From IMG/VR virus record IMGVR_UViG_3300033141_006329, positions 62,001 to 126,000 of that record: a stretch of DNA of 64,000 bases. One strand, 5' to 3'. Below are positions 7,278 to 52,250 of the stretch, one piece after another. Below the pieces are notes generated by a model. That model saw nothing but the letters and a program-made list of their open reading frames with translations, made no database searches and was not told the origin of the DNA. How positions within the stretch are numbered: position 1 is the stretch's first letter; every line of letters begins with the position of its first letter. Made by a program: the position numbers and the translations under genes.

Positions 7278-8018
7278 CTATAAATAAAATTGCATCAGAA
7301 ATGAACTGATGTATATATCTTTGGTTCGAATACTACCTTTAACCCTAACATCAAATATGGCTTCTGCTGGTGGAACATTTGTCATAGTATCATCTGCAAG
7401 AACTACCCAGTCAGAACTAGATGTAGAAACTTCTGATATAACTGTATCGTGTGTAGTATCATACAATTGATAATATGCTATTAAACCAATTGCTGCTTTA
7501 ACTAAATATTTACAACCTGTAGGCACACCCACTATGGAAGATCCTCTATATATAAATTGTCTAACTGATATCCACGTAGTTGTCCTATATGTATTATGAT
7601 CCCTATCAGCAGCTCCCATATCTATAATAGTATCACCACCTCCATGAAAAACCGGAGATATTATCCAATGAAGATTGCCATCCTGACATTCCAATGTTTT
7701 GTGACCAGAAGTAGGTTTTGTGGGTACATCTGTATGTTCGTCTAATTCGTGATCAATAAATACACCATCTACATCTTCATACTCTGTTTCAAAATTAACG
7801 TGTCGTATACCATTTACTATTGATAAATCATTTGTTCCATCATTTATAGTTAACAAACCACCCAATACATAGGTATCTATATCTGTGGATGTGGATATAT
7901 CTATCTTGGTGAATAATTCAGTTAATTCGATCTGGGAAGAGGCCGGAATGCCAATCCCCAGATCGTTTATAAATAATTCGCTTGTCGTATCATTGATAGC
8001 AATTATTGTTGTTGCCAT
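7278..8018 (-). CDS. Virion structural protein (N-terminal domain shared with 8022..9449)
   Basis: IAIND...INDLGI...IND G...LS...G.R pattern matches IAIKDS...VEDLGI...INNG..NLS...GVR. Confidence 0.65.
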   Translation of the reverse strand: MATTIIAINDTTSELFINDLGIGIPASSQIELTELFTKIDISTSTDIDTYVLGGLLTINDGTNDLSIVNGIRHVNFETEYEDVDGVFIDHELDEHTDVPTKPTSGHKTLECQDGNLHWIISPVFHGGGDTIIDMGAADRDHNTYRTTTWISVRQFIYRGSSIVGVPTGCKYLVKAAIGLIAYYQLYDTTHDTVISEVSTSSSDWVVLADDTMTNVPPAEAIFDVRVKGSIRTKDIYISSFLMQFYL

Positions 8019-8021
8019 ATA

Positions 8022-9449
8022 TTAGTCTTTTCTCCATGCAATTTCTATCAATAAAACAGGATCAGTTACAGCCGAACTACATTCAACAAAACTTTGCAGA
8101 AAATCCCCAGCTGCTAAATCAACATCTATAGTGGTATCACCTGACCCTATGGTAGCAGATAATGCTAATGTTGAAATATTAGATATAACATCATTCTTAC
8201 GAATATGAAAATCTGCTGTCCCAGATGAATCTACCTGTACAGAAAGACTCACTATCGTGGCTGTTCGGACCATTCTGAGGCCGGAATTATTGGATAATAA
8301 TTGGCCCCCATAAAAGCCTAAATATTGGTTCTTAGAAGCACCACGCTTACCAAAGCATAACATCATGCGGTCTACTGAGAGCCATTTTGAACGGCTATCG
8401 TCGTAAGTGTAAAGGATACCATCTGTCTGGCGGGATAATTGGCCGGGCTGAAGGTCGGATGTTGGAACAGAGGATTGTGGCGTAAGTTCGAGCGGTGCGT
8501 AAGTGGATGTAGCATCGAGGATTACGGCTTTTGCATCGACAATTATTTTTCGGCCGACTCCTGGTCCTCCTTGATCGTATGCGCTGTCAAGATCTGGATT
8601 TTGCGATAGCAATGCTATATCAATATCACCAAGAACAGTTTCTAAATCGTCTCCTGCCTCGTTTCCAATGTTTATGTAAGCATTCTCAACATCTATGTAA
8701 TTGGCAGGATGTCTATGTGGTCCACTAAAATCAACATCCGCCATTTTTGTCCAACCAACGGAACCATGTGCAGGATCTGAATTGTAAATATATTGAGCTT
8801 GTCCTCCGTCTCCGTCATCATTCACATTTACTGCTGCATTGTCCAATTCTTGAGCTTGTTCTGTAAATTCCCCGCTGGTGGAATCAAAAACATATACGTC
8901 TTCATTAACATTAGCAAGATTAATAACGCGATCACCTTCCTGTGCGGTACTCTGCGCTACCCATTCGCTCGTTGAGTCCACATACAAATAATAGTTATCA
9001 TCATCTGTATCAAAATATACATCACCAATTTCCGGAGATCCTGGTGGTGTATCAGTTATATCTTCTACTCTATATAATACTGGGTCTATCCAATACTGGG
9101 TTATGTTTGGCACATTTGTAATATTGTCCCAATGGACTTCGCTGTCGCCTCCTACATTTAATTCATTTTTACTATAATAATTATCCTCAAGATATTCACC
9201 TTGTATAAAGGTTAGGTATCTTACCCCTGCCTCGGCTGATAGATTTTCTACTCCGTTATTTATTATTACATCACCATCTTCAACTACTTGTCGTAAAGAG
9301 TCGCTGCCAGCGAGTTCATCATATGAGAACCACTCTGATAAACTTTGACCATTCGTAGAATCTAATATCTCTATCCCTAAATCCTCTACCCAGATTCCAC
9401 TAGCGGTAGAATCTTTTATAGCAATTACGGTATACATAGGTACGGACAT
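8022..9449 (-). CDS. Virion structural/fibre-like protein
   Basis: 475 aa, acidic; TPPGSPEIGDVYFDT..YYLY motif; C-terminal domain paralogous to 10376..10837. Confidence 0.7.
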   Translation of the reverse strand: MSVPMYTVIAIKDSTASGIWVEDLGIEILDSTNGQSLSEWFSYDELAGSDSLRQVVEDGDVIINNGVENLSAEAGVRYLTFIQGEYLEDNYYSKNELNVGGDSEVHWDNITNVPNITQYWIDPVLYRVEDITDTPPGSPEIGDVYFDTDDDNYYLYVDSTSEWVAQSTAQEGDRVINLANVNEDVYVFDSTSGEFTEQAQELDNAAVNVNDDGDGGQAQYIYNSDPAHGSVGWTKMADVDFSGPHRHPANYIDVENAYINIGNEAGDDLETVLGDIDIALLSQNPDLDSAYDQGGPGVGRKIIVDAKAVILDATSTYAPLELTPQSSVPTSDLQPGQLSRQTDGILYTYDDSRSKWLSVDRMMLCFGKRGASKNQYLGFYGGQLLSNNSGLRMVRTATIVSLSVQVDSSGTADFHIRKNDVISNISTLALSATIGSGDTTIDVDLAAGDFLQSFVECSSAVTDPVLLIEIAWRKD

Positions 9450-26229: not shown

Positions 26230-26247
26230 AGAACCCCTCCCCTATTA

Positions 26248-26312
26248 ATTATGCTTTAACGTTTTTAATTTGTCCAGTCGTATGTGTGGAGTTTTGATTT
26301 TAATATAATTTA
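26248..26312. repeat. 65-bp exact direct repeat, copy 1 (contains the regulatory element)
   Basis: ATTATGCTTTAACGTTTTTAATTTGTCCAGTCGTATGTGTGGAGTTTTGATTTTAATATAATTTA, identical at 27938..28002. Confidence 0.8.
26266..26289 (-). promoter_or_regulatory. Class 1 element upstream of clamp loader
   Basis: CCACACATACGACTGGACAAATTA. Confidence 0.7.
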
Positions 26313-26672: not shown

Positions 26673-27920
26673 TTAATTTGCTCCAATATCCTTCCTGTAA
26701 TACATGCCCTCAAAATGTGTTTTTTCTATTGCTCTATTAGTTAATTCTGAGGCTAATTTTAAATTAGAAGCCTTAGCCACAACGCTATACACACGACCCC
26801 CATTTGTAATTATTTCTCCATCTACATATTTCGTACCAGCATGAAATATTTTTGCTTCGCTATCTTCTATTCCACTTATTTCAAATCCCTTCACACATTC
26901 TCCTGGATATCCGCTAGATACTGCTACTTGACAAATAGCACTTTCATCTGACCATTCAATATCTGTCCAACCTAACATCCGATTGGTACAATTATCCATT
27001 ACTCTAACTAAATCACTTTTCAGAAGCATTAAAATAACCTGCGCTTCAGGGTCTCCGAGCCTAACATTATATTCTAAAACATAAGGCTCATCATCTTTGA
27101 TCATCAGTCCTATATAAAGAACTCCTCTATAATCAATTTTGCTTTCTTTTAACCCTTTAATTGTTAGGTTTATTATATTCTTTTCAATTTTCTCAAATAG
27201 TTCAGGTGTAATTAAATCATGTGGACAATATGAACCCATTCCCCCAGTGTTCAATGCACCTTCATCGGAATTTAACTTTTTATAATCCTTGGCAATTGGC
27301 ATAATCTTTGCTGTCTGTCCATCAAAAAACATCATACATGACGCTTCAAATCCTTCTATAAAATCCTCTATTAGAATATTATCTCCAGCTTCTCCAAATC
27401 TTTTTTCTACCATTATTTCATTTAATGCATATATACCATCTGACTTATCATTGCATATATAAACACCTTTTCCTGCGGCTAATCCATCTGCTTTAATAAC
27501 ATACTTACCTGACTTATTTTCAATATATTTTTTAGCAGAGTTAATATTAGAAAAAGTCCTAAAACTAGATGTAGGGATTTCATTCTTACACATAAAAATC
27601 TTAGCAAATATCTTACTTGATTCCAACCGTGCAGCCTTCTTATTTGGTCCAAATATTTTTAAACCCCTTCTCTCAAACTCATCTACTATTCCTAGACTCA
27701 GAGGTAATTCGGGCCCAACTACAGTTAGATCTATTTTTTCTTCTAATGCGAATTCAGCAAGACTTCCTATATCTGAAATATCTCCTGGTACACATTTAGC
27801 ATGTTTACTTATTCCGGGGTTTCCAGGTATGCATATTATTTCTGGTTTTTGTGGACTCTGGGATAGTTTCCATGTAATAGCATGTTCTCGTCCTCCAGAT
27901 CCTATAACTAATATCTTCAT
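26673..27920 (-). CDS. purD: Phosphoribosylamine-glycine ligase
   Basis: GSGGREHA, VVGPE.PL..G..D.F, LESSK.FAK, VIKADGLAAGKGV, D.K......G.NTGGMG, EYNVRLGDPE, HAGT, GGRV, YYRKDIG. Confidence 0.95.
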   Translation of the reverse strand: MKILVIGSGGREHAITWKLSQSPQKPEIICIPGNPGISKHAKCVPGDISDIGSLAEFALEEKIDLTVVGPELPLSLGIVDEFERRGLKIFGPNKKAARLESSKIFAKIFMCKNEIPTSSFRTFSNINSAKKYIENKSGKYVIKADGLAAGKGVYICNDKSDGIYALNEIMVEKRFGEAGDNILIEDFIEGFEASCMMFFDGQTAKIMPIAKDYKKLNSDEGALNTGGMGSYCPHDLITPELFEKIEKNIINLTIKGLKESKIDYRGVLYIGLMIKDDEPYVLEYNVRLGDPEAQVILMLLKSDLVRVMDNCTNRMLGWTDIEWSDESAICQVAVSSGYPGECVKGFEISGIEDSEAKIFHAGTKYVDGEIITNGGRVYSVVAKASNLKLASELTNRAIEKTHFEGMYYRKDIGAN

Positions 27921-27937
27921 ATATAATCCCCTTTATT

Positions 27938-28002
27938 ATTATGCTTTAACGTTTTTAATTTGTCCAGTCGTATGTGTGGAGTTTTGATTTTAATATAATT
28001 TA
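27938..28002. repeat. 65-bp exact direct repeat, copy 2
   Basis: Identical to 26248..26312; offset 1690 bp. Confidence 0.8.
27956..27979 (-). promoter_or_regulatory. Class 1 element upstream of purD
   Basis: CCACACATACGACTGGACAAATTA. Confidence 0.7.
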
Positions 28003-34724: not shown

Positions 34725-36722
34725 TTAAAAATTATTTTCAATCACACTTTGAAGATCCACATCCTCAAAATTATTATCGCTTGGAATATCCTGCAATACT
34801 CTGGATTGACTTACGTCATCTTCCTCTTTAAGTAGTTTTGCTATCTTTAAAACTGACCTCCTATCCTTTAAAGTATTATCTATTTCCATTGCCCTTTTTA
34901 TTTTAAACATCTGGGCTGGGATATCTCTATGTTGCATAAATGCAGACACGTCCTCAAATTTTTTACAATTGTTCTTCAAATCACCCAATAAATATTCCTC
35001 AGCATATCCCTTTAAACATTCCAGAAATAATTTCATTTTCTCATCCATTTTTGTGACTGGCGCTTCCTTTATTACTTCTTTTTGTGTTTTCTGTTTGGGT
35101 TTACTTGGGGTTTTAGTTAATGCTGTCTTTATATCTTCTGGTAACAATATATCAGTATCTGGTTTATCTATTCCATGCTTTTCAAATATTGTATAAACCT
35201 CTTTAGTTGTAGTAAATTTCTTGGCTGGTGTACCTGTAATAATCTTAGCTATTCTATCATAGGAATTCTTAAACATCTTTAAATCTACTGCCAAGATACT
35301 ACCTAACGTTAGATCTGCATATTCTTTCTCTACTATATCAAGTACACCACAGGTTTTACATCTATTATATTCTATCTCTATTTCATCCTCAAATGATTTA
35401 TTTATATCCAACGAAAATAGGAAGGGTGCAAACAATATCCTCATCGTGTATAGTGTTCTTCTATATTCATCTACTACTTTCATATCAGCATCATTTGTAT
35501 CAATCCATGTAAAATATTTATTGACCAACATATCATATATAATATAGATAGATAATATTTCTTTGGATATCTCAAATAGTGGATCACCTTTACTTATAGA
35601 TTTATGAAATTTTATTATAGGTACTTTTTTGGCTGGGTATCCTTCACCTGTTACTAGAGCATGTTTTACACCATCTTTAATAGCCTTTATCATACCGTAT
35701 TGCATCAGATAATAACCCTCAGTATTACTATATTCCATCATGATATCATCGCTTATATTACAAGTTGAAGTTATCATATCTATAGGTGTAAATATTTTAA
35801 GATCTGATTTTTTATTTGAGGATATAAAAGAAGCTGACCATTCTCTCAGTCTGTTTATATCACAGTTAAGAAAATTATTAACAAAGGGTTTGGATGGATT
35901 GATTCTTTTTTCTTTTTTAGTACTATCACCAGAATCATCTGGAATATCAGGAAGTTCAATGTCCTCAAATGTATTACTGACTGTGCATAATTTATTGAAT
36001 TCAATCCCTGCATCTGCTGATTTATCATTTTCTACATCTTGTTCTTCTTCTATCTCATCCATAGAATTATCATATTCTTCTATCTCGAATTGTTCGGAAG
36101 AGGGTGGAGATTGTGAGATTGATAAGTTTCTCAGCTCTTTTGTTAACCTATCAAATCCGGCGGTTATATTGCTGTTAATCGTAGTTATTTTACCCATGAG
36201 CCTATTTAACGTTAGAATGGTTTTAGTACCCGTATCGACTGTTATGAAACTATTTGTATATTGTTTCATTAATTCAATCATTGTTTTAAAAGTTAGAAAA
36301 TCTACAGGTATAGTTAATTTTCCTACAGTAGAAACTGAATTAGTAACAATCATTGTAATAGCAGGTTTTCGATTCTCGTGATCATAGGCTAGATTGAATA
36401 ATAGTTCTGCCTTAGATTTCTTAAGGTATTTTACAACACTTACATTGCCACCTGTAATAAATGCTTGTTCTGGTCCTACCTTCATAAAATTTGTTACTTG
36501 ATTTATAAGATCATATATATGGTGTATACATAATGATGCTCTTATGGATTTATAACCCGTGCGAGGATCTAATATGGCTACAGTTAACATTGTAGGTTCA
36601 TAGCTTTCCCATTTATCATCTGATCGGATAACTGTACTAGTGCTCATTTTCATTGATATGGATGTTCGCGGATCAGTATACTCCATTAAATGATTTTGTA
36701 AAAACAAACTCTCTTTTTCCAA
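34725..36722 (-). CDS. Large hypothetical protein
   Basis: 665 aa; beta-rich N domain, acidic linker, helical C part; downstream of the 36765 motif. Confidence 0.7.
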   Translation of the reverse strand: MEKESLFLQNHLMEYTDPRTSISMKMSTSTVIRSDDKWESYEPTMLTVAILDPRTGYKSIRASLCIHHIYDLINQVTNFMKVGPEQAFITGGNVSVVKYLKKSKAELLFNLAYDHENRKPAITMIVTNSVSTVGKLTIPVDFLTFKTMIELMKQYTNSFITVDTGTKTILTLNRLMGKITTINSNITAGFDRLTKELRNLSISQSPPSSEQFEIEEYDNSMDEIEEEQDVENDKSADAGIEFNKLCTVSNTFEDIELPDIPDDSGDSTKKEKRINPSKPFVNNFLNCDINRLREWSASFISSNKKSDLKIFTPIDMITSTCNISDDIMMEYSNTEGYYLMQYGMIKAIKDGVKHALVTGEGYPAKKVPIIKFHKSISKGDPLFEISKEILSIYIIYDMLVNKYFTWIDTNDADMKVVDEYRRTLYTMRILFAPFLFSLDINKSFEDEIEIEYNRCKTCGVLDIVEKEYADLTLGSILAVDLKMFKNSYDRIAKIITGTPAKKFTTTKEVYTIFEKHGIDKPDTDILLPEDIKTALTKTPSKPKQKTQKEVIKEAPVTKMDEKMKLFLECLKGYAEEYLLGDLKNNCKKFEDVSAFMQHRDIPAQMFKIKRAMEIDNTLKDRRSVLKIAKLLKEEDDVSQSRVLQDIPSDNNFEDVDLQSVIENNF

Positions 36723-36763
36723 AGTCCTTCTCCTTTTAATTTTTTAGTGATGCTTTTATGTTT

Positions 36764-37117
36764 TTAGTTTGTCCAGTTGTATGAACGGTTATTTTCTATT
36801 AGATTTTTTAATAATCTCCTATGACAATTTCTATCACTCTTTTCCCAACACAACAGAGTAATCAATTCTCCATCATCACTTCTCTTCTTTAATTCTTTGA
36901 TCAGATTCTTCCTACTCTCCATCTCTTTTAAGTATCTCGTTTCATAATCATCCCAATCAATAGTCTTTGCCCTATAATCATTCAACAGTTCTATAGACGG
37001 CGCTAATTTCTTTAACCACTCATCATAATCATAGAAATTTTTAATCCATCTCATCACACAAATTCTTGTGCCATCATCTTCATTTTTTTCACTCATAATA
37101 CTTTTTGTTTTAATCAT
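36764..37117 (-). CDS. DUF488/YeaO-family protein
   Basis: DDG.RI.V.R, DEWLK.LAPS.EL, W..Y..RY..EM, ITLLC.E....CHR..L. Confidence 0.8.
   Translation of the reverse strand: MIKTKSIMSEKNEDDGTRICVMRWIKNFYDYDEWLKKLAPSIELLNDYRAKTIDWDDYETRYLKEMESRKNLIKELKKRSDDGELITLLCWEKSDRNCHRRLLKNLIENNRSYNWTN
36765..36788 (-). promoter_or_regulatory. Class 1 element upstream of 665-aa gene
   Basis: CCGTTCATACAACTGGACAAACTA. Confidence 0.65.
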
Positions 37118-37143
37118 TGATTCCCCTTTGATTTTATTCTTTT

Positions 37144-37167
37144 TAATTTGTCCAGTTGTTTGACTGG
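37144..37167 (-). promoter_or_regulatory. Class 1 element upstream of DUF488 gene
   Basis: CCAGTCAAACAACTGGACAAATTA. Confidence 0.7.
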
Positions 37168-37503
37168 TTATTCTTCTGTGGGTGGTAAGGGTCTTTTTAG
37201 TTTCACTTTATCGTCGATTACTTTGATAATTTTCCAGTTATCTTTAGTTTCTTGATATTGATCTTCCTCAATTCTACGTCGGATATTTTTCTCTGCTGTT
37301 TCCTGGTCCCAGTAGATTTCTATTTCTTCAGAGGAACCACCTAAATCACGATTCGATACATCCTCCCAATTAAGTATGGTAGCTTTATCATATTTCCATT
37401 TATAATTAAAATGGTACCATTTTCTAACCCATTTTAAAATTAGACCTGTTCCTTTTCTTTGTATTTTATAAAATCTTCCATTACTGACTATCTTATATAT
37501 CAT
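37168..37503 (-). CDS. Hypothetical protein
   Basis: 111 aa; GGAGG RBS within the 34-bp leader cassette. Confidence 0.6.
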   Translation of the reverse strand: MIYKIVSNGRFYKIQRKGTGLILKWVRKWYHFNYKWKYDKATILNWEDVSNRDLGGSSEEIEIYWDQETAEKNIRRRIEEDQYQETKDNWKIIKVIDDKVKLKRPLPPTEE

Positions 37504-37510
37504 TTTTAGT

Positions 37511-37544
37511 CCTCCTATATGATTTATGTTTTTAGTTTGTCCAG
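37511..37544 (-). repeat. 34-bp motif/leader/RBS cassette identical to 51891..51924
   Basis: CTGGACAAACTAAAAACATAAATCATATAGGAGG in both places (opposite strands). Confidence 0.85.
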
Positions 37545-37556
37545 TGTCGGAAGAGG
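37533..37556 (-). promoter_or_regulatory. Class 1 element upstream of 111-aa gene
   Basis: CCTCTTCCGACACTGGACAAACTA. Confidence 0.65.
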
Positions 37557-37594
37557 TGTATTATTTTATGAGGGTAATGAAACGGATAAAATAA

Positions 37595-37618
37595 CCACAC
37601 ATGTGACCGGACAAACTA
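37595..37618 (+). promoter_or_regulatory. Class 1 element pointing into the non-coding region (orphan)
   Basis: CCACACATGTGACCGGACAAACTA. Confidence 0.65.
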
Positions 37619-37684
37619 TTGTGTTTATGATTTATCATGTTTGATTTTCTAAGTCCATAGTTACTCATCTTTTATCAACTTCGT

Positions 37685-37885
37685 CTATTGGGATGTGAAC
37701 TATTGTTGAACGGATGATTATAACTGGTGGAGAAGAAAGGTCACTAACAATTCAGGTTTCCGTTGGAGGAAGGATCTTTGATCCTACGTTCAACAGGACA
37801 GTTTGAACATCAATTGCGATAGCAAGCACAATAAGCAAAAAAGAAAAGTATCATTCTAATGAAGGACTGGATAATAACCAGTCAT
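37685..37885 (+). ncRNA. Candidate structured non-coding RNA
   Basis: No ORF. TGTTGAACG (37704-12) pairs with CGTTCAACA (37787-95); outer stems GATGT/ACATC and CTATTG/CGATAG; GACTGG-N7-CCAGTC hairpin at 37865-83; motif at 37595 points into it. Confidence 0.4.
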
Positions 37886-38081
37886 TTCAACATGGAAATA
37901 TACAGGGGTCATATTGTGAGGAGAAAATTTGAGGATAACTTATTGAAATATTTATCATTGATTATAAAAAAGATATAAATAATATACTCCAAATTTTTGG
38001 TAAGGAAAAATCTTTTTTCCAAAAAACAAACACTTACAATCAAACCCTGATAAAAAACACTGGGTTGAAAAAAATCATACC

Positions 38082-38091
38082 GGACAAATTA
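38082..38091 (+). promoter_or_regulatory. Class 2 element (core only) in the non-coding region
   Basis: GGACAAATTA. Confidence 0.4.
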
Positions 38092-38354
38092 TTGAATTTG
38101 AATATAATAATTATGTCTCTTACGAGATTTACATGATTTGGATTTTCCCCATTCAAAATACTTTCAGTTTATTAGAATGGACTAAAAATTTAAAAGGTTA
38201 TTATATTTATCAAGTCCTTTTTTACCCGAGTTAGTTTGTATTCTCAAATATTCATATTTGAGGATAAAACTAGCTGAATAAATAATTATTAAAATACTAT
38301 ACGAAGTATGAAGAATAGCAAAAAAGAAAAGAATATAACCACTGTGTTAAGGTA

Positions 38355-38379
38355 TTGACAAGGTGATATAACTTGTCAA
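38355..38379. promoter_or_regulatory. Perfect 8-bp inverted repeat, operator-like
   Basis: TTGACAAG-N9-CTTGTCAA. Confidence 0.45.
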
Positions 38380-38466
38380 ATCTTTATACATTCTTAAATT
38401 ATAATATCCGATCTGAATGATTAAAAATCCTTGAACATTCTTAATTTGTAATACCCGATCTGAATG
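38378..38466. repeat. Imperfect tandem repeat, 47-bp period
   Basis: AAATCTTTATACATTCTTAAATTATAATATCCGATCTGAATG at 38378 versus AAATCCTTGAACATTCTTAATTTGTAATACCCGATCTGAATG at 38425 (6 mismatches in 42). Confidence 0.75.
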
Positions 38467-38832
38467 GATAAAACTTCCCGCCATCACTTTTTCTTTTTTC
38501 TTTTTGATGGGTTATTCTGATTTGCTTTATCTGATTCACCTCGTCGCCGAGGCAAATCGATTCTCTTTTCATAGGAGGTCTATCTCCGCCCATAAATATA
38601 AAAATAAACCTTCCATAATATAATTATAAAAAGAAATTCACATCCTCATTAACCCTTTCCCTCAATACCCAAATCAAAAATATCTAGCGCAAAATTATAA
38701 TGTTTTATCCTCAACAATTTGGGTCAATTTACTTACGGTTTTTTCGCCACAGCTTCTCAGTATCCTGAGCTACTATTCCCGCCGCGAAGGTAGAATATAA
38801 AGTTATTCGCGCCCCGCAAAAATGATGTGGAA

Positions 38833-38864
38833 CAAAGGGCATACGACAGATCGCATACCCTTTG
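38833..38864 (-). terminator. Stable hairpin downstream of the 131-aa gene (terminator-like)
   Basis: CAAAGGGTATGCGA-TCTG-TCGTATGCCCTTTG on the minus strand; U-tract weak. Confidence 0.55.
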
Positions 38865-38882
38865 CAACGAATTGAATATGTG

Positions 38883-39278
38883 TTATATTTCTTTTTGCAA
38901 GTCCTCAGAACCTTCCATTGGGACCTTACATTTAGAACACTTAGTTTCCATGCAGGGTTTTCCTTTTTCATGAGGGATTGTATTCCCACACTTAGGGCAA
39001 ACGCAAGAAACTATTTTCCCCTCACCTTTGGCAGGAAATCCTTGACCTTTCCCACCAGCTTCAACTAATGAACCTTCACTAATCCCTTTTAATTTTTTCA
39101 AAGTTTTTTTTGCAATATCTATTTTTCCTTGCCATCTTTGTCTACATCTCTCATGTCTACATTTAGATTTTTTCATAGTATACGTTGCTATCAGATTATT
39201 GACAGTTCTTATCTGGCTTTTAGTATAAATATCCTTAATACCTTCCTGTAAATTATCCAACCAATCTTTTGAAATCAT
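38883..39278 (-). CDS. Hypothetical protein with C-terminal double Zn-ribbon
   Basis: G.G.G.P....CVCPKCG..IPH.KG.PC....C.KC..PM. Confidence 0.65.
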
Positions 39279-39315
39279 TTTATCTCCTTATGTTATTCGA
39301 TTATATACTCTTTTA

Positions 39316-39325
39316 TAATTTGTCC
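39316..39325 (-). promoter_or_regulatory. Class 2 element upstream of 131-aa gene
   Basis: taagaGGACAAATTATAAAAG. Confidence 0.55.
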
Positions 39326-39327
39326 TC

Positions 39328-39591
39328 TTACTTATCTCCTACTTCTTTTTGTTTCCTCAATATTTCCCACTGCTTTAATGCGACTGGTTTCTTTGTCCAT
39401 TCATTAGGATTTCCTTCACTAGATGCTGCAAAAGTTATTTCCAATGTATGTTCCTCAATATTAACATTTGGTACACCAAATGCAGTATTATCATCAGTCT
39501 TGATATAGTTATCATCTAACCAATCCCATAAATCCTGTAGGGGAACTATTACCTTTCCTTCGTAGATTCTAGCCATTAAATTGTTACCCAA
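39328..39591 (-). CDS. Hypothetical protein
   Basis: 87-aa ORF; probable start at MARIYEG. Confidence 0.55.
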   Translation of the reverse strand: MGNNLMARIYEGKVIVPLQDLWDWLDDNYIKTDDNTAFGVPNVNIEEHTLEITFAASSEGNPNEWTKKPVALKQWEILRKQKEVGDK

Positions 39592-40652
39592 CCTCCCTTA
39601 ACTTTTCGTGTCTTCTTTAACTTTTTCTGTAGCCTTTGAAACTTCAAAGTATCATTGTTCCTAAGAGAATTACCTGGCTCTGTTGTTGCTATCTTTATAA
39701 TATCTTCAGAGGTATTAGTCCAGGTTCTATATTTTTTAACAAATTCTAAACCACTCCTTGCTATTGCTTCTCGTTCATCATCATGCTTCAAATAATATTC
39801 CACTGCATTATTTAGTGCTATTATATTCTTAAATTCTACAATGTCTCTTTTATCTTTCATGTCCATTAATTCTTCCATTTTTGGAATACGTTTGGTTAGA
39901 ACCATTGATCCACACGCCATGCAATTCCATAATCTCAAAGATGTATAACCAGGATAATTTCCTCTACTGATGTTTAATACCAATTTACTTTGTGAACATA
40001 TTTTTCTGAATTCATCGGGTTCGACAAAACTAGTATAGTGGGGTCCAAAGAATTTTACATTGTAGTTTTTCTTCCTTAAAAAATCATAAATAGTGGTCCT
40101 CTCAGGATCAGCTGCACCTATAAAAATTACATCATATTTCTTTTTAGTTAGTTCTGGATAATATTTATCAGGATCTGTTCCATCGAATACATGATAAACT
40201 GGCATTTGTGCACTATTGCTCCAGAGCAAAGCAGTTCCATACCCAGTAGCACTTCTATATGCACAAAATCTTGAAGACTCAAATAATGATTTATTTTTAA
40301 AATGGGAATATACATCAGGCATCCAAAAATATAATCTGCAATTCATTTTGGACATTTGAAAAGTATGTAAAGGTATACCATTACCCTTCATTATTATAAT
40401 TAGATCACAAGTTCTAGATAGTTCCATAACATTATTTATAACAGCACTAATATTCCTTTTAAGAGCAGTTCTATAATCTAATCTTATAACTTCACTTACT
40501 GAATCCAATCTTTCCATATGATTTGCAAATGGTATGGATGATGATGCTGGATTATTAAATACCCCTGCGAATCCTACTTTTAAGGGTAATTGTAAGGGAT
40601 TTTCTACCTCTATATCTCTACCTAAAATACTTGGAGTTACTTTCCTGATCAT
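39576..40652 (-). CDS. CgeB-like GT-B glycosyltransferase (Glyco_trans_1_2)
   Basis: YDVIFIG...ER, SK.VLNISR, SLRLWNCMACGS.VLT, YYL.HD.ERE.IA..G. Confidence 0.8.
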   Translation of the reverse strand: MIRKVTPSILGRDIEVENPLQLPLKVGFAGVFNNPASSSIPFANHMERLDSVSEVIRLDYRTALKRNISAVINNVMELSRTCDLIIIMKGNGIPLHTFQMSKMNCRLYFWMPDVYSHFKNKSLFESSRFCAYRSATGYGTALLWSNSAQMPVYHVFDGTDPDKYYPELTKKKYDVIFIGAADPERTTIYDFLRKKNYNVKFFGPHYTSFVEPDEFRKICSQSKLVLNISRGNYPGYTSLRLWNCMACGSMVLTKRIPKMEELMDMKDKRDIVEFKNIIALNNAVEYYLKHDDEREAIARSGLEFVKKYRTWTNTSEDIIKIATTEPGNSLRNNDTLKFQRLQKKLKKTRKVKGGWVTI

Positions 40653-41578
40653 ATTTCTAACTCCACAGTTGCACAGAGAGGAGCATCTTTTGAACCTGCT
40701 TTATCTTTATGTTTCCTTAAAAATCTAATCATCTTGTCAGGATCTTTTTTGGTAGCATAATATATTCTCCTGTTCTCTAATCTATATTGACCGTTTATCC
40801 ATTTGTCCTTTTTAACGTGGCTGACGGGATGATATAAGTGGTTAATAGTCCAGGGGAACATATCATAAGATTTAAACATATGAGATGCTCTAAGGGCCAT
40901 CTCGTTGTCTATACCTCCGAGTTCTTGGAACCCCTCATTGGCACCTCCCATCTCCCAATAAGCAGTTTTATTATAATACAAAATTCCCCCCTCAGCCATA
41001 CCCCGGGTAGGTTTAGATACTCGTATCTTCTTGCTGAATGTTTCATCCCAGTATACTATTTCAGACCAAGCAAAGAACCATCGTTTCACCTTATTCTTTG
41101 GTCGTTTTTTAGCAAATTTATATAGCTCAGTAAAGTAGTTTAAATCCACACAAATATCTCCTTCTCCCATCAACAAATGCCCAGTCTTAGCATTTCTTAC
41201 TCCTACATTGAAAAGCCACCCCTTATTAAAAATGGGATATCTGACTAATATTTTTGTTATGTTTTTATTTGCAGGAATTCTTATATTATTAGAATATAGA
41301 GGAAGTGTAGGATCTAGCATTTGTTCTACGATTATAAGATGTATATTTTGGGGTATTACTCGTACTATAGATTCTAAGTTCCTAAGTCGATATTCGAATC
41401 CGTCATTATTCATATTGCATACGGGTATAATGAAATCCATATTGAGATTAATTTTCCCCCCATATATTCTATTATATTCATCCACTGAGGGATGGTCGGT
41501 TTTCACGTTTATATGTTTTAGAAGCCCAAGTTCTGATACACAGACTTTTCCGCATACTTTACATTCTATTTTAGCCAT
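40649..41578 (-). CDS. GT-A glycosyltransferase (GT2/GT7C-like) with N-terminal C2H2-type Zn finger
   Basis: CKVCGK..S..GL..HI....H; FIIPV, FNKGWLFNVG, EGD, GG.NE.F...GG.D.E. Confidence 0.75.
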   Translation of the reverse strand: MAKIECKVCGKVCVSELGLLKHINVKTDHPSVDEYNRIYGGKINLNMDFIIPVCNMNNDGFEYRLRNLESIVRVIPQNIHLIIVEQMLDPTLPLYSNNIRIPANKNITKILVRYPIFNKGWLFNVGVRNAKTGHLLMGEGDICVDLNYFTELYKFAKKRPKNKVKRWFFAWSEIVYWDETFSKKIRVSKPTRGMAEGGILYYNKTAYWEMGGANEGFQELGGIDNEMALRASHMFKSYDMFPWTINHLYHPVSHVKKDKWINGQYRLENRRIYYATKKDPDKMIRFLRKHKDKAGSKDAPLCATVELEI

Positions 41579-45212: not shown

Positions 45213-45222
45213 TAGTTTGTCC
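45213..45222 (-). promoter_or_regulatory. Class 2 element upstream of the GT2 operon
   Basis: gaataaaGGACAAACTAAAAAC. Confidence 0.55.
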
Positions 45223-48290: not shown

Positions 48291-48804
48291 GATATTTACA
48301 GAATGGCTACTAAACCCTTGCCCAGATGCTGAATTATCTGGAGATGTGATTAAAGCTATTAATCCCAGGACAGTGATATGTATGTTTGGAAAAATTGGGG
48401 GCCTCACTATATTCTTGAATGATCACTTTAATAACTTTAGTGTTATGAACTTGGATCCTTTAGAGTTTTATCAATTCCTTAAGAGTCTCGTAAAAAAATA
48501 TAAAATTAAGAAATGGGACTTTTCATATTTTCCTACAATGAAGCGAGATAAAACCATATCAGAGATCCAAATGAAACTTCCTCATCTCAAGAAAAGTGAG
48601 ATCATCTATCTATTAGAACAATGTAAGAGTGATGAGGATTATGATTCCTTCTGTGAGAGTCTGGGAATTAGAAAGAACCCTAAAATAAAGAAAATTAAAA
48701 AGAAAGGTAAAAAAAATAAAAAGCTAATCGTGTCTACCTTCGGTGATAGTATGATAAAAAATATTAGAACTATGGATGATTGGATAGATTGCTTTGGTAT
48801 GTAA
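48265..48804 (+). CDS. Hypothetical protein (possibly small clamp-loader subunit, gp62-like)
   Basis: 179 aa helical, Lys-rich tail; family assignment weak. Confidence 0.45.
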   Translation: MEKKISPYRIFTEWLLNPCPDAELSGDVIKAINPRTVICMFGKIGGLTIFLNDHFNNFSVMNLDPLEFYQFLKSLVKKYKIKKWDFSYFPTMKRDKTISEIQMKLPHLKKSEIIYLLEQCKSDEDYDSFCESLGIRKNPKIKKIKKKGKKNKKLIVSTFGDSMIKNIRTMDDWIDCFGM

Positions 48805-51629: not shown

Positions 51630-51653
51630 CCACCACAACAACTGGACAAATTA
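51630..51653 (+). promoter_or_regulatory. Class 1 element
   Basis: CCACCACAACAACTGGACAAATTA. Confidence 0.7.
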
Positions 51654-51685
51654 AAAACAATTAAAGCATATAGGAGGACTAAATT

Positions 51686-51878: not shown

Positions 51879-51902
51879 CCGGCCTAGTAACTGGACAAAC
51901 TA
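51879..51902 (+). promoter_or_regulatory. Class 1 element upstream of ASCH/polB
   Basis: CCGGCCTAGTAACTGGACAAACTA. Confidence 0.7.
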
Positions 51903-51932
51903 AAAACATAAATCATATAGGAGGGGATAAAA

Positions 51933-52250
51933 ATGAATAGAGCAATGCAAGCTATTTTAATAGCAGGAACAAAAATGAAAGAAGATGTTTTATATGGGAG
52001 AAAGAAAATAACCATTAGAGAAGGTCATAAAGACTATACTGGGGGCCCAGTACTGATAGGATGTGATTTACTAAATTGGGCTACGCGGAAAAAAATAATT
52101 AGTGTGAGATATACCACAGTAGGTGAAGTTACAAATAAGGAGTGCATGGATGATGGAATTGGTGCTAATTTAAATTTAATGATAGAGCTTCAAAAATATT
52201 ATCCAAATCTCACAATGGATTCACCTGTAACTGTAATTAGGTGGGAATAG
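51933..52250 (+). CDS. ASCH-domain protein
   Basis: G.K.ITIR.G, V....V.EVT..E...DG, VTVI.W. Confidence 0.7.
   Translation: MNRAMQAILIAGTKMKEDVLYGRKKITIREGHKDYTGGPVLIGCDLLNWATRKKIISVRYTTVGEVTNKECMDDGIGANLNLMIELQKYYPNLTMDSPVTVIRWE

What the first reader, a model, noticed from the sequence alone, without database searches (positions are those of the whole stretch)
37595..37900. Orphan class 1 element driving a candidate structured ncRNA
Seen: a near-consensus element (CCACAC-N8-GGACAAACTA) faces away from the neighbouring genes into ORF-free DNA. About 65 nt downstream is a roughly 140-nt imperfect rod (CTATTG/CGATAG, GATGT/ACATC, GAACT/AGTTT, perfect TGTTGAACG/CGTTCAACA) with small apical hairpins, then a GACTGG/CCAGTC hairpin. 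It is not a tRNA or tmRNA by eye. Inference: a phage small RNA (6S-like decoy, antisense regulator or new class).
Basis: partly seen in the sequence, partly recalled or inferred. Interest (0 to 1): 0.6.

Follow-up and report, generated by a model that had tools for sequence, protein, structure and literature searches.

The report
Two candidate structured phage RNA genes
In an otherwise tightly packed genome of an uncultured giant phage, a 1.4-kb gene-free gap carries two oppositely oriented phage-promoter-like sites, each followed by about 290 bases that fold unusually well as RNA and share conserved end boxes, so they look like two sister non-coding RNA genes of an unknown family, but no transcript or relative could be found to prove it.

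Summary
The element is real, but only partly "near-consensus". GGACAAAYTA occurs 20 times in the window against 0.4 expected, and 40 times in the 223-kb record. It follows gene orientation and normally precedes an SD and ATG. The full motif is GGACAAAYTAnAAA. The copy at 37609 and a second + strand copy at 38082 replace the otherwise invariant AAA with TTG.

That segment folds no better than shuffles (z -1.55), and enforcing the rod costs 13 kcal/mol.

A larger picture does hold:
- Units A (37619-37903) and B (38092-38390) both lie on the + strand.
- They share a 16-nt promoter variant, an exact 15-nt A-rich box and a following hairpin with compensatory pair changes.
- They have the same order of predicted hairpin modules.
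- They fold better on + than on - (A z -3.4 vs -2.5; B z -4.9 vs -1.8).
- They sit in the only purine-rich island of a 45-kb minus-strand gene block.
- Neither strand shows coding signal.

There is no Rfam, tRNA or tmRNA match, no homologue in any collection searched, and no RNA data. My best reading is two paralogous phage ncRNAs, confidence about 0.45. The rivals are decayed promoter duplications and a transcription-primed origin.

The parts
37533..37545 (-). Minus-strand promoter core (GGACAAACTA followed by AAAA) of the 111-aa gene. It is the divergent partner of orphan element A, 66 bp away.
   Evidence: It is followed by a leader, an SD and an ATG at 37503.
37595..37621 (+). Orphan element A: CCACAC, 8 nt, GGACAAACTA, then TTG in place of the invariant nAAA.
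   Evidence: Scores are upstream +14.0 bits, core +18.3 bits and downstream -15.7 bits.
37619..37903 (+). Unit A, the predicted RNA body. Modules in order: a 5'/3' closing helix (37617-24 with 37826-33), a long imperfect hairpin (37642-37743), a second hairpin (37751-37807), a small hairpin (37814-37825), the single-stranded A-box, and a 3' hairpin.
   Evidence: MFE is -73.9 kcal/mol. z is -3.42 on + and -2.47 on -. Helix pair probabilities are 0.78-1.00.
37834..37848 (+). A-rich box AGCAAAAAAGAAAAG, copy 1.
   Evidence: There are only two exact copies in 223 kb on both strands. Both are on the + strand, 216 and 226 nt after the two orphan cores.
37848..37903 (+). 3' hairpin of unit A. The core is GACUGG/CCAGUC at 37865-70 and 37878-83.
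   Evidence: pair probability 0.90-1.00. It is not a canonical terminator.
37927..37985 (+). Degenerate copy of the element (GGATAACTTATTGAA at 37933), followed by the least stable 50-bp DNA stretch of the window (37936-37985).
   Evidence: repeats D8 and D9; -47.5 kcal/mol, tied for least stable of 64 kb.
38079..38094 (+). Orphan element B: ACCGGACAAATTATTG. It matches element A at 15 of 16 positions and has no CCACAC upstream.
   Evidence: (D5).
38092..38390 (+). Unit B, the predicted RNA body. Modules in order: a long hairpin (38093-38212), a 21-bp hairpin (38229-38275), a small hairpin (38294-38309), the A-box (38317-38331), and a 3' hairpin (38343-38390, core UUGACAAG/CUUGUCAA).
   Evidence: MFE is -66.9 kcal/mol. 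z is -4.87 on + (0 of 100 shuffles as good) and -1.79 on -. The centroid is close to the MFE structure. These are the top-ranked windows of the window-wide scan.
38378..38471 (.). Two tandem 47-nt repeats, 83% identical. The first overlaps the 3' flank of unit B's hairpin.
   Evidence: D1.
38730..38885 (-). Strand-specific structured element just after the 131-aa gene. It contains a 15-bp hairpin followed by a U-run and is probably the terminator that closes the upstream minus-strand unit.
   Evidence: z is -4.01 on - and -0.51 on +.

Best explanation
The 1.38-kb gene-free gap (37504-38882) holds two tandem, paralogous genes for structured non-coding RNAs of about 285-300 nt. Both are read from the + strand, against the flow of the surrounding minus-strand genes. 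The units are A (37619-37903) and B (38092-38390).

Each starts at a variant of the phage's own promoter, ACCGGACAAAYTA followed by TTG instead of nAAA. That promoter is probably used by the multisubunit RNA polymerase the phage encodes.

Each RNA is predicted to fold into a long imperfect hairpin, a second hairpin and a small hairpin. These are followed by a conserved single-stranded A-rich box (AGCAAAAAAGAAAAG) and a 3' hairpin with a conserved loop.

Shown here:
- The motif statistics.
- The absence of coding signal.
- Strand-specific excess folding.
- The sense-strand composition of the + strand.
- Conserved end boxes with diverged bodies, and matching predicted architecture.

Inferred, not shown:
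- That the sites fire at all.
- Where the RNAs start and end.
- What they do.

My best guess at function is a stable regulatory or protein-binding RNA. Its conserved A-box plus 3' hairpin would be the platform that is recognised, by an RNA chaperone or a phage or host protein, or that sets 3'-end formation and stability. The divergent bodies would give each copy its specificity.
For: - The motif is a genuine, strand-coherent promoter-like signal. The record encodes beta- and beta'-like RNA polymerase subunits.
- Back-to-back divergent promoter pairs also occur at 45222/45266 and 149276/149312, where both partners drive genes.
- Neither strand shows coding potential across 37510-38880, and there are no SD-led ORFs.
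- In a composition-corrected MFE scan of 2554 windows, the + strand of 37600-38400 takes ranks 1, 2, 5, 15, 18 and 21-23.
- The + strand folds better than the - strand in both units: A z -3.42 vs -2.47, B z -4.87 vs -1.79.
- The purine-skew maximum of the whole 45-kb minus-gene block lies at 37687-37986. Its value, +0.207, is typical of + strand genes.
- The 16-mer and the 15-mer box each occur only twice in 223 kb, at matching spacing, while the bodies are barely alignable (z about 3). This pattern implies selection on the boxes.
- The 3' hairpin stems differ by two double, pair-preserving changes (U-A to A-U and G-C to A-U), and the loop is conserved (read).
- The predicted architectures of A and B are closer than 99.7% of pairs of equally well-paired control windows.
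- The genome has at least one other promoter followed by a short non-coding hairpin unit with a clean terminator.
- Jumbo phages are known to make ORF-free intergenic RNAs of 236-619 nt (PMC7318152) and intergenic sRNAs (PMC11512511).
Against: - No transcript evidence exists. No RNA run holds the sequence.
- No homologue was found anywhere, so there is no covariation test across species.
- Both orphan sites lack the AAA that is invariant in every gene-associated copy. They may be weak or dead.
- Neither 3' hairpin is a canonical terminator.
- A close relative in a marine-sediment run matches the flanking genes and the promoter up to 37626 at about 90-95%. Nothing of 37706-37839 matches at 80% or more, so the body is either fast-evolving or replaceable.
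- The region also holds degenerate promoter-like copies at 37933 and 38262. That fits a duplication-and-decay history.
- The structure evidence rests on prediction from only two sequences.
Confidence: 0.45

Rival explanations
1. The region is non-functional debris. It is a hyperplastic intergenic stretch built by duplication, inversion and recombination of the phage's mobile promoter-leader cassettes. The + strand sites are decaying promoter fossils, and the folding signal comes from leftover inverted repeats.
For: - Both orphans have lost the invariant nAAA.
- Further degenerate copies of the core lie at 37933 and 38262 (D8, D9).
- The 21-bp hairpin of unit B is itself made of two inverted, degenerate core-like halves.
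- 37626-37649 resembles the neighbouring leader (D4).
- Promoter-leader cassettes are repeated at 91-94% identity elsewhere in the genome.
- A close relative does not match the body at 80% or more.
Against: - Neutral decay should not leave a 15/15 box and a 15/16 promoter variant intact while the DNA between them has diverged almost to randomness.
- It does not explain why the + strand folds better than the - strand in both units.
- It does not explain the sense-strand purine skew.
- It does not explain the matching module order.
- Phage genomes rarely keep 1.4 kb of junk.
Confidence: 0.22
2. The region is a replication origin or another DNA-level control region, in which orphan promoters fire into easily melted DNA. 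The models are the T7 primary origin, with two tandem phage promoters followed by an AT-rich stretch, and T4 oriF/oriG, with a promoter, an unwinding element and a persistent RNA primer (both from established knowledge). The transcripts would act in cis as primers or R-loops.
For: - Two tandem orphan promoters lie in the largest gene-free gap of this block.
- The least stable 50-bp stretch of the window is at 37936-37985. Among 200-bp windows, 38101-38300 ranks fifth least stable.
- There are two 47-nt tandem repeats at 38378-38471.
- The phage has a family-B, T4-type DNA polymerase.
Against: - Unit A's body is of average or above-average duplex stability.
- There is no iteron array beyond the two repeats.
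- GC skew turns at the strand switch near 45.2 kb, not here. The skew simply tracks gene orientation.
- The strand-specific RNA folding and the conserved 3' module are not needed for a simple unwinding origin. A structured primer RNA such as ColE1 RNA II would, however, reconcile the two readings.
Confidence: 0.15
3. The promoters act as a convergent-transcription insulator. The + strand promoters fire towards the end of the upstream minus-strand unit to block or degrade read-through into the next, differently timed operon. The RNA product itself is unimportant.
For: - The gap lies between a strong minus-strand terminator-like element at 38730-38885 and the next minus-strand promoter at 37542.
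- The + strand sites face the incoming transcription.
- The upstream promoter at 39325 lacks CCACAC, whereas the downstream ones at 37542, 37153 and 36774 are of the upstream-box class.
Against: - Interference needs neither 290-nt structured bodies nor conserved 3' boxes nor two copies.
- A good terminator already stands at 38.8 kb.
Confidence: 0.1

Closest known systems
Intergenic ncRNAs of jumbo phages found by transcriptomics (PA5oct ncRNA001-004, 236-619 nt; 201phi2-1 and phiKZ sRNAs)
   Same: They are ORF-free stretches of a giant phage genome and are of similar length. They have no similarity to any known RNA family and their function is unknown (PMC7318152, PMC11512511).
   Different: Those were defined by RNA reads, whereas this one is defined by sequence only. 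Here there are two paralogous copies with conserved end boxes, and a recognisable phage-specific promoter variant. There is no sequence relation.
6S RNA
   Same: It is a stable, highly paired RNA of a few hundred nucleotides or less that is not translated. A decoy role for a phage-encoded polymerase cannot be excluded.
   Different: No match to any 6S model of Rfam, even at E up to 10. The predicted fold is a chain of hairpins, not a single rod with a central open-promoter-like bubble.
T7 primary origin (tandem promoters phi1.1A and phi1.1B plus an AT-rich region) and T4 oriF/oriG
   Same: Phage-specific promoters without a gene of their own, in tandem, fire into AT-rich non-coding DNA.
   Different: No replication data are available. 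Unit A's body is not AT-rich or unstable. The RNA-level conservation (A-box, hairpin) has no counterpart in those origins.
Promoters of multisubunit RNA polymerases of jumbo phages (AR9 late consensus AACA-6N-U-A/G(+1); phiKZ late TATG overlapping the start site)
   Same: They are short, highly conserved, phage-specific motifs close to or overlapping the start site, in a phage that encodes beta and beta' homologues (PMC7598289). SD sequences begin as close as 5 nt after the 10-nt core, so the start must lie within or just after the motif.
   Different: The sequence is different (GGACAAAYTAnAAA, with an optional CCACAC box 8 nt upstream). No start sites have been mapped, and which polymerase reads the motif is unknown.
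Hfq-type sRNA 3' modules (A-rich or U-rich single strand plus terminator hairpin)
   Same: A conserved single-stranded purine-rich tract is followed by a hairpin at the 3' end of an otherwise variable RNA.
   Different: The RNAs are about three times longer than typical sRNAs. The hairpins lack a U-tail. The host and its chaperones are unknown. No target complementarity above chance was found.

Membership tests
Any Rfam family (including 6S, tmRNA, RNase P, SRP, pRNA, GOLLD, ROOL, HEARO, riboswitches) | Covariance-model score at or above the family's gathering threshold | tested here: not met
   There were 0 hits in the whole window at gathering thresholds. For 37400-39000 at E up to 10, only eight chance-level hits to eukaryotic snoRNA and miRNA models and the like appeared. 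All scored far below their gathering scores.
tRNA / tmRNA | Cloverleaf, or tRNA-like domain with tag reading frame | tested here: not met
   ARAGORN found 0 genes in the window and 0 in the whole 223-kb record.
6S RNA | Single long rod closed by the 5' and 3' ends, with a large central bubble that mimics an open promoter | tested here: not met
The ensemble shows two or three independent hairpin domains inside a short closing helix.
6S RNA | Binds RNA polymerase holoenzyme and templates pRNA synthesis | not testable with these tools
   This needs biochemistry.
Phage promoter class GGACAAAYTAnAAA of this genome | 10-nt core GGACAAAYTA | tested here: met
   Exact cores lie at 37609-37618 and 38082-38091.
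Phage promoter class GGACAAAYTAnAAA of this genome | AAA at positions 12-14 (invariant in 37 of 40 copies, and in all copies with a gene) | tested here: not met
   Both orphans carry TTG there. Their downstream scores are -15.7 and -10.9 bits.
   This is met for A (upstream score +14.0 bits) and not met for B (-10.7 bits).
Intrinsic (factor-independent) terminator at the 3' end | G+C-rich stem directly followed by a U-run | tested here: not met
   The terminator scan of 37000-39500 found no site at 37865-37890 or 38355-38390. The tails read AUUUCAAC and AUCUUUAU. A canonical terminator does exist elsewhere in the genome.
Structured ncRNA gene in general | Folding energy better than shuffles, on the transcribed strand | tested here: met
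   A: z -3.42 on + and -2.47 on -. B: z -4.87 on + and -1.79 on -. These are the top ranks in the window-wide scan.
Structured ncRNA gene in general | Compensatory base changes among homologues | tested here: inconclusive
   No homologues were found in any collection. Between the two paralogues, two pair-preserving double changes occur in the 6-bp core of the 3' hairpin. The overall predicted architecture is unusually similar (p about 0.003). Two sequences cannot carry a statistical covariation test.
Structured ncRNA gene in general | A transcript with defined ends | not testable with these tools
   No RNA run holds the sequence. Only two marine-sediment DNA runs were found, kept as contigs.
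T7/T4-type transcription-primed origin | Gene-less phage promoter(s) followed by an easily unwound AT-rich element | tested here: inconclusive
   The promoters are present. The least stable 50-mer of the window lies about 320 nt after site A and about 100 nt before site B, and unit B's DNA is among the least stable 200-mers. Unit A's body is not unstable. No replication data are available.
Type III toxin-antitoxin (ToxI-like RNA) | Array of several tandem repeats of about 36 nt, directly followed by a ToxN-family endoribonuclease gene | tested here: not met
   There are only two 47-nt repeats. The neighbouring proteins have no such family hits.

The most novel reading that the evidence does not exclude
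The two units are a new family of about 290-nt structured RNAs. The phage's own multisubunit RNA polymerase would make them from a dedicated promoter subclass that starts with G instead of AAA. They would act through the conserved A-box and 3' hairpin to control the phage programme. For example, they could titrate a host or phage RNA-binding protein or the phage polymerase, or prime replication as a ColE1-RNA-II-like structured primer.
Probability: 0.12. Interest if true: 0.7.

Novelty: new member of a known kind. Interest (0 to 1): 0.4.

Why it matters
Giant phages that carry their own RNA polymerase are known from transcriptomes to make abundant ORF-free RNAs, yet none of these RNAs has an assigned function or a recognisable family. 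This locus offers a paired example in which sequence alone marks the parts under selection. Those parts are a promoter variant, a single-stranded A-rich box and a 3' hairpin, each of which can be mutated and tested.

It also yields a clean, information-rich promoter motif (GGACAAAYTAnAAA, with or without an upstream CCACAC box) for an uncultured RNAP-encoding jumbo phage from marine sediment.

If the region turns out to be debris or an origin, the result is still useful as a caution. An orphan promoter plus by-eye complementarity is not enough to call an RNA gene.

Tried and rejected
Searches for relatives that led nowhere:
- blastn of 36500-39500 against cultured phages found no match.
- Flanking proteins of 111 aa and 665 aa, and the DNA polymerase, found no relatives in IMG/VR.
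- The 111-aa protein found only itself among 5.8 billion proteins, and the 131-aa protein found nothing.
- A stem-based DNA pattern in IMG/VR gave one unrelated giant-virus contig, which did not align.
- The class-1 promoter pattern gave 0 hits in IMG/VR. In GTDB genomes it gave 6 single hits, about the number I estimate for chance, each with only one motif per locus.
- The two-box pattern (core, 205-235 nt, A-box) in JGI metagenomes gave 4 hits. All lie in unrelated DNA with one motif per locus (three plainly inside genes), so they are chance matches.

Expression:
- No RNA run was found.
- Contigs from two sediment DNA runs show one or more close relatives. They cover 36500-37626 but not the RNA body. 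Short contigs cannot prove absence.

Readings rejected:
- tRNA or tmRNA.
- Any Rfam family.
- Small proteins: no SD and no codon signal.
- CsrB-like GGA sponge: unit A is only moderately GGA-rich and unit B is not.
- Trans-antisense pairing to the phage's mRNA leaders: duplex energies are no better than for shuffled RNA. By my estimate, the 10-nt seed to the neighbouring leader is about the length expected by chance.
- Origin by GC skew: the skew only follows gene orientation.
- T7-like single-subunit polymerase or sigma-70 domains in the record: none found. Beta and beta' homologues were found.

Technical failures:
I replaced them with a composition-regressed MFE scan.
- MAFFT could not give a structure-consistent alignment of the two 3' hairpins. 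I therefore read the compensatory changes directly from the sequence rather than counting them with the pair-count tool.

Full report
**Setting**

The window is bases 62001-126000 of a 223-kb IMG/VR record. That record was cut from a 306-kb JGI metagenome contig. It has 33% G+C, strong SD sequences, a distant family-B (T4-type) DNA polymerase and no tRNA. It also encodes its own beta- and beta'-like RNA polymerase subunits. It is therefore an uncultured jumbo phage of the kind that carries a multisubunit polymerase. The only public runs holding related sequence are marine-sediment metagenomes. I found nothing closely related to it in cultured phages, IMG/VR, JGI metagenomes or GTDB genomes.

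**The element**

GGACAAAYTA occurs 20 times in the window against 0.41 expected, and 40 times in the record.
- Copies follow gene orientation. They are on the minus strand up to 45 kb and on the plus strand beyond.
- They are normally followed within 15-45 nt by an SD and a start codon.
- A position matrix built from the 27 copies with an SD and start codon shows that the motif is really GGACAAAYTAnAAA. AAA at positions 12-14 is as invariant as the core.
- About half the copies also carry a CC(A)CAC box 8 nt upstream.
- SD sequences can begin 5 nt after the core. The start site must therefore lie in or just after the motif. This is what is described for promoters of jumbo-phage multisubunit polymerases (PMC7598289).

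Only three of the 40 copies lack the AAA. One is an intragenic copy that looks like chance. The other two are the + strand copies at 37609 and 38082, which sit inside a 45-kb block of minus-strand genes. It has an excellent upstream half (+14 bits) and a perfect core. It departs from the consensus exactly where the transcript should begin (-15.7 bits).

**The gap**

- Between the 111-aa gene (start at 37503) and the 131-aa gene (stop at 38883) lie 1.38 kb with no codon-usage signal in any frame.
- There is no ORF with an SD. A 50-aa ORF called by JGI at 38441-38593 has neither a codon signal nor an SD.
- At the far end of the gap (38730-38885) there is a strongly strand-specific structure on the minus strand. 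Its z is -4.0 on the minus strand and -0.5 on the plus strand. It looks like the terminator of the upstream unit.

- All four complementary pairs exist.
- The 151-nt segment folds no better than shuffles (z -1.55).
- In the ensemble the two arms of the 'perfect' 9-mer pair elsewhere. GUUGA pairs with UCAAC at 37675-79, and UUCAAC pairs with GUUGGA at 37762-67, the latter with probability 1.00.
- Forcing the rod costs 13.3 kcal/mol.
- The rod should therefore be dropped, and with it the 6S-like picture.

**What is there instead**

There is a second unit. Both + strand cores share the 16-mer ACCGGACAAAYTATTG. Each is followed, 216 and 226 nt later, by the exact 15-mer AGCAAAAAAGAAAAG. Each string occurs only twice in the 223 kb on either strand.

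After the box comes a hairpin whose loop and 3' arm align (GAUAAUAACCAGUCA against GAUAUAACUUGUCA). The stems differ by two double changes that keep pairing: U-A becomes A-U, and G-C becomes A-U. The bodies between the boxes are barely alignable (z about 3 against shuffles). This contrast between intact boxes and diverged bodies argues for selection on the boxes.

Base-pair probabilities give the same order of modules in both units:
1. a long imperfect hairpin of 100-120 nt;
2. a second hairpin of 47-57 nt;
3. a small hairpin;
4. the A-box, unpaired;
5. a three-part 3' hairpin.

In unit A the first nucleotides after the core pair with the nucleotides just before the A-box.

The tree-edit distance between the two predicted structures is 158. 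For pairs of equally well-paired control windows from the same genome it is 235 +/- 28, and only 0.3% of such pairs are as close.

**Strand and significance**

| Unit | Strand | MFE (kcal/mol) | z | Shuffles as good |
|---|---|---|---|---|
| A (37619-37903) | + | -73.9 | -3.42 | 1 of 200 |
| A (37619-37903) | - | -60.6 | -2.47 | 4 of 200 |
| B (38092-38392) | + | -66.9 | -4.87 | 0 of 100 |
| B (38092-38392) | - | -51.9 | -1.79 | 4 of 100 |

- Unit B's centroid on the + strand almost equals its MFE structure.
- I scanned all 200-nt windows of the 64 kb on both strands, with MFE regressed on base composition. The + strand of 37600-38400 holds ranks 1, 2, 5, 15, 18 and 21-23 of 2554.
- Independently, the purine skew of the + strand peaks at 37687-37986. 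This is the highest value in the whole 45-kb minus-gene block, and it equals that of + strand genes. The + strand therefore carries sense-strand composition here.

**Interpretation**

Taken together, the best reading is two paralogous genes for structured RNAs of about 285-300 nt, transcribed from a variant of the phage promoter. I put this at about 0.45.

The function is inferred only. The conserved, unpaired A-rich box and the 3' hairpin are the obvious recognition or stability module. The bodies would carry copy-specific roles.

Two specific ideas gained no support:
- a CsrB-like GGA sponge;
- antisense pairing to the phage's shared mRNA leaders.

Supporting context:
- The genome uses back-to-back promoter pairs elsewhere, with genes on both sides.
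- It has another promoter followed by a 75-nt two-hairpin unit with a textbook terminator, upstream of a second promoter. This lies outside the window.
- Jumbo phages are known to make ORF-free RNAs of this size (PMC7318152, PMC11512511).

**Against, and rivals**

- There is no RNA evidence and there are no homologues, so the classical tests of transcript and covariation remain open.
- The missing AAA may mean that the sites are weak or dead.
- Neither 3' hairpin is a canonical terminator.
- A relative at 90-95% identity in a sediment run matches the flanks and the promoter up to 37626, but nothing in 37706-37839 at 80% or more. Those contigs are short, however.
- The gap also holds degenerate core copies at 37933 and 38262. 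The 21-bp hairpin of unit B is built from two inverted core-like halves.

A duplication-and-decay history is therefore a serious rival (0.22). It does not explain the intact boxes, the strand asymmetry or the skew.

A transcription-primed origin of the T7 or T4 type is the second rival (0.15). It rests on tandem gene-less promoters, the least stable 50-mer of the window at 37936-37985, very unstable DNA under unit B and two 47-nt repeats. GC skew gives it no support, and unit A's body is not easily melted.

A convergent-transcription insulator is possible (0.10), but it needs none of the conserved RNA features.

**Novelty and score**

If real, this is a new family within a known kind, the intergenic ncRNAs of giant phages. 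It is interesting mainly because the paired copies expose what is under selection, and because it ties an RNA to a phage-polymerase promoter variant. As it stands it is an unvalidated singleton from a metagenome. I score interest at 0.4.

Noticed in passing
G000:C1:27796-28941 and 36180-37279 (outside the window; loci L020-L022): The record encodes beta-like (137 bits, 1372-aa open frame) and beta'-like (open frames of 322 and 1634 aa) subunits of a multisubunit RNA polymerase. The first 38 kb of the record, where these genes lie, contain no copy of GGACAAAYTA. That suggests a different promoter class for that block.
   Followed up: partly
window 37500-37545, 51641-51683, 51890-51936; also 26230-26275 and 27920-27965: Promoter plus 5' leader cassettes of 40-70 nt are repeated at 91-100% identity in front of unrelated genes. 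They resemble the mobile regulatory cassettes described in T4-type phages and could drive recombination in the gap.
   Followed up: partly
L019:343-432 (window coordinate about 132842-132930, outside the window): This is a second orphan unit. A promoter is followed by a two-hairpin stretch of about 75 nt that ends in a G+C-rich stem with a U-rich tail (z -4.3; the MFE structure holds 41% of the ensemble). It lies 144 nt before the next promoter, which drives a gene. It is a candidate small RNA or attenuator and has no Rfam match.
   Followed up: partly
window 38730-38885 (-): A strongly strand-specific structured element lies after the 131-aa gene. It has a 15-bp hairpin with G-U pairs followed by a U-run. 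z is -4.0 on the minus strand and -0.5 on the plus strand. It is probably a terminator.
   Followed up: yes
window 38378-38471: Two tandem 47-nt repeats, 83% identical, start inside the 3' flank of unit B's hairpin. They are followed by a long T-rich run at 38486-38504 that is nearly complementary to the A-box. Their function is unknown.
   Followed up: no
window 36764-37117 (-) and 39576-41578 (-): A DUF488-N3a protein (E 1e-24) lies 386 bp below the gap, with the 111-aa gene between them. A cluster of glycosyltransferase-like genes lies a few hundred bp above it, beyond the 131-aa gene and a short ORF. Together these may form a DNA- or surface-modification module.
   Followed up: no
window 7801-8050 (-), 48401-48650 (both strands): These are other top-ranked windows in the composition-corrected folding scan (z -3.8 and -3.6). 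They lie inside long ORFs. I did not examine them.
   Followed up: no
window 37130-37544, in run X1: The sediment relative replaces 181 nt in the middle of the 111-aa gene with 187 unrelated letters, while keeping both ends at about 92-95%. At least two variants share the promoter region 37526-37626. This is local mosaicism among close relatives.
   Followed up: no
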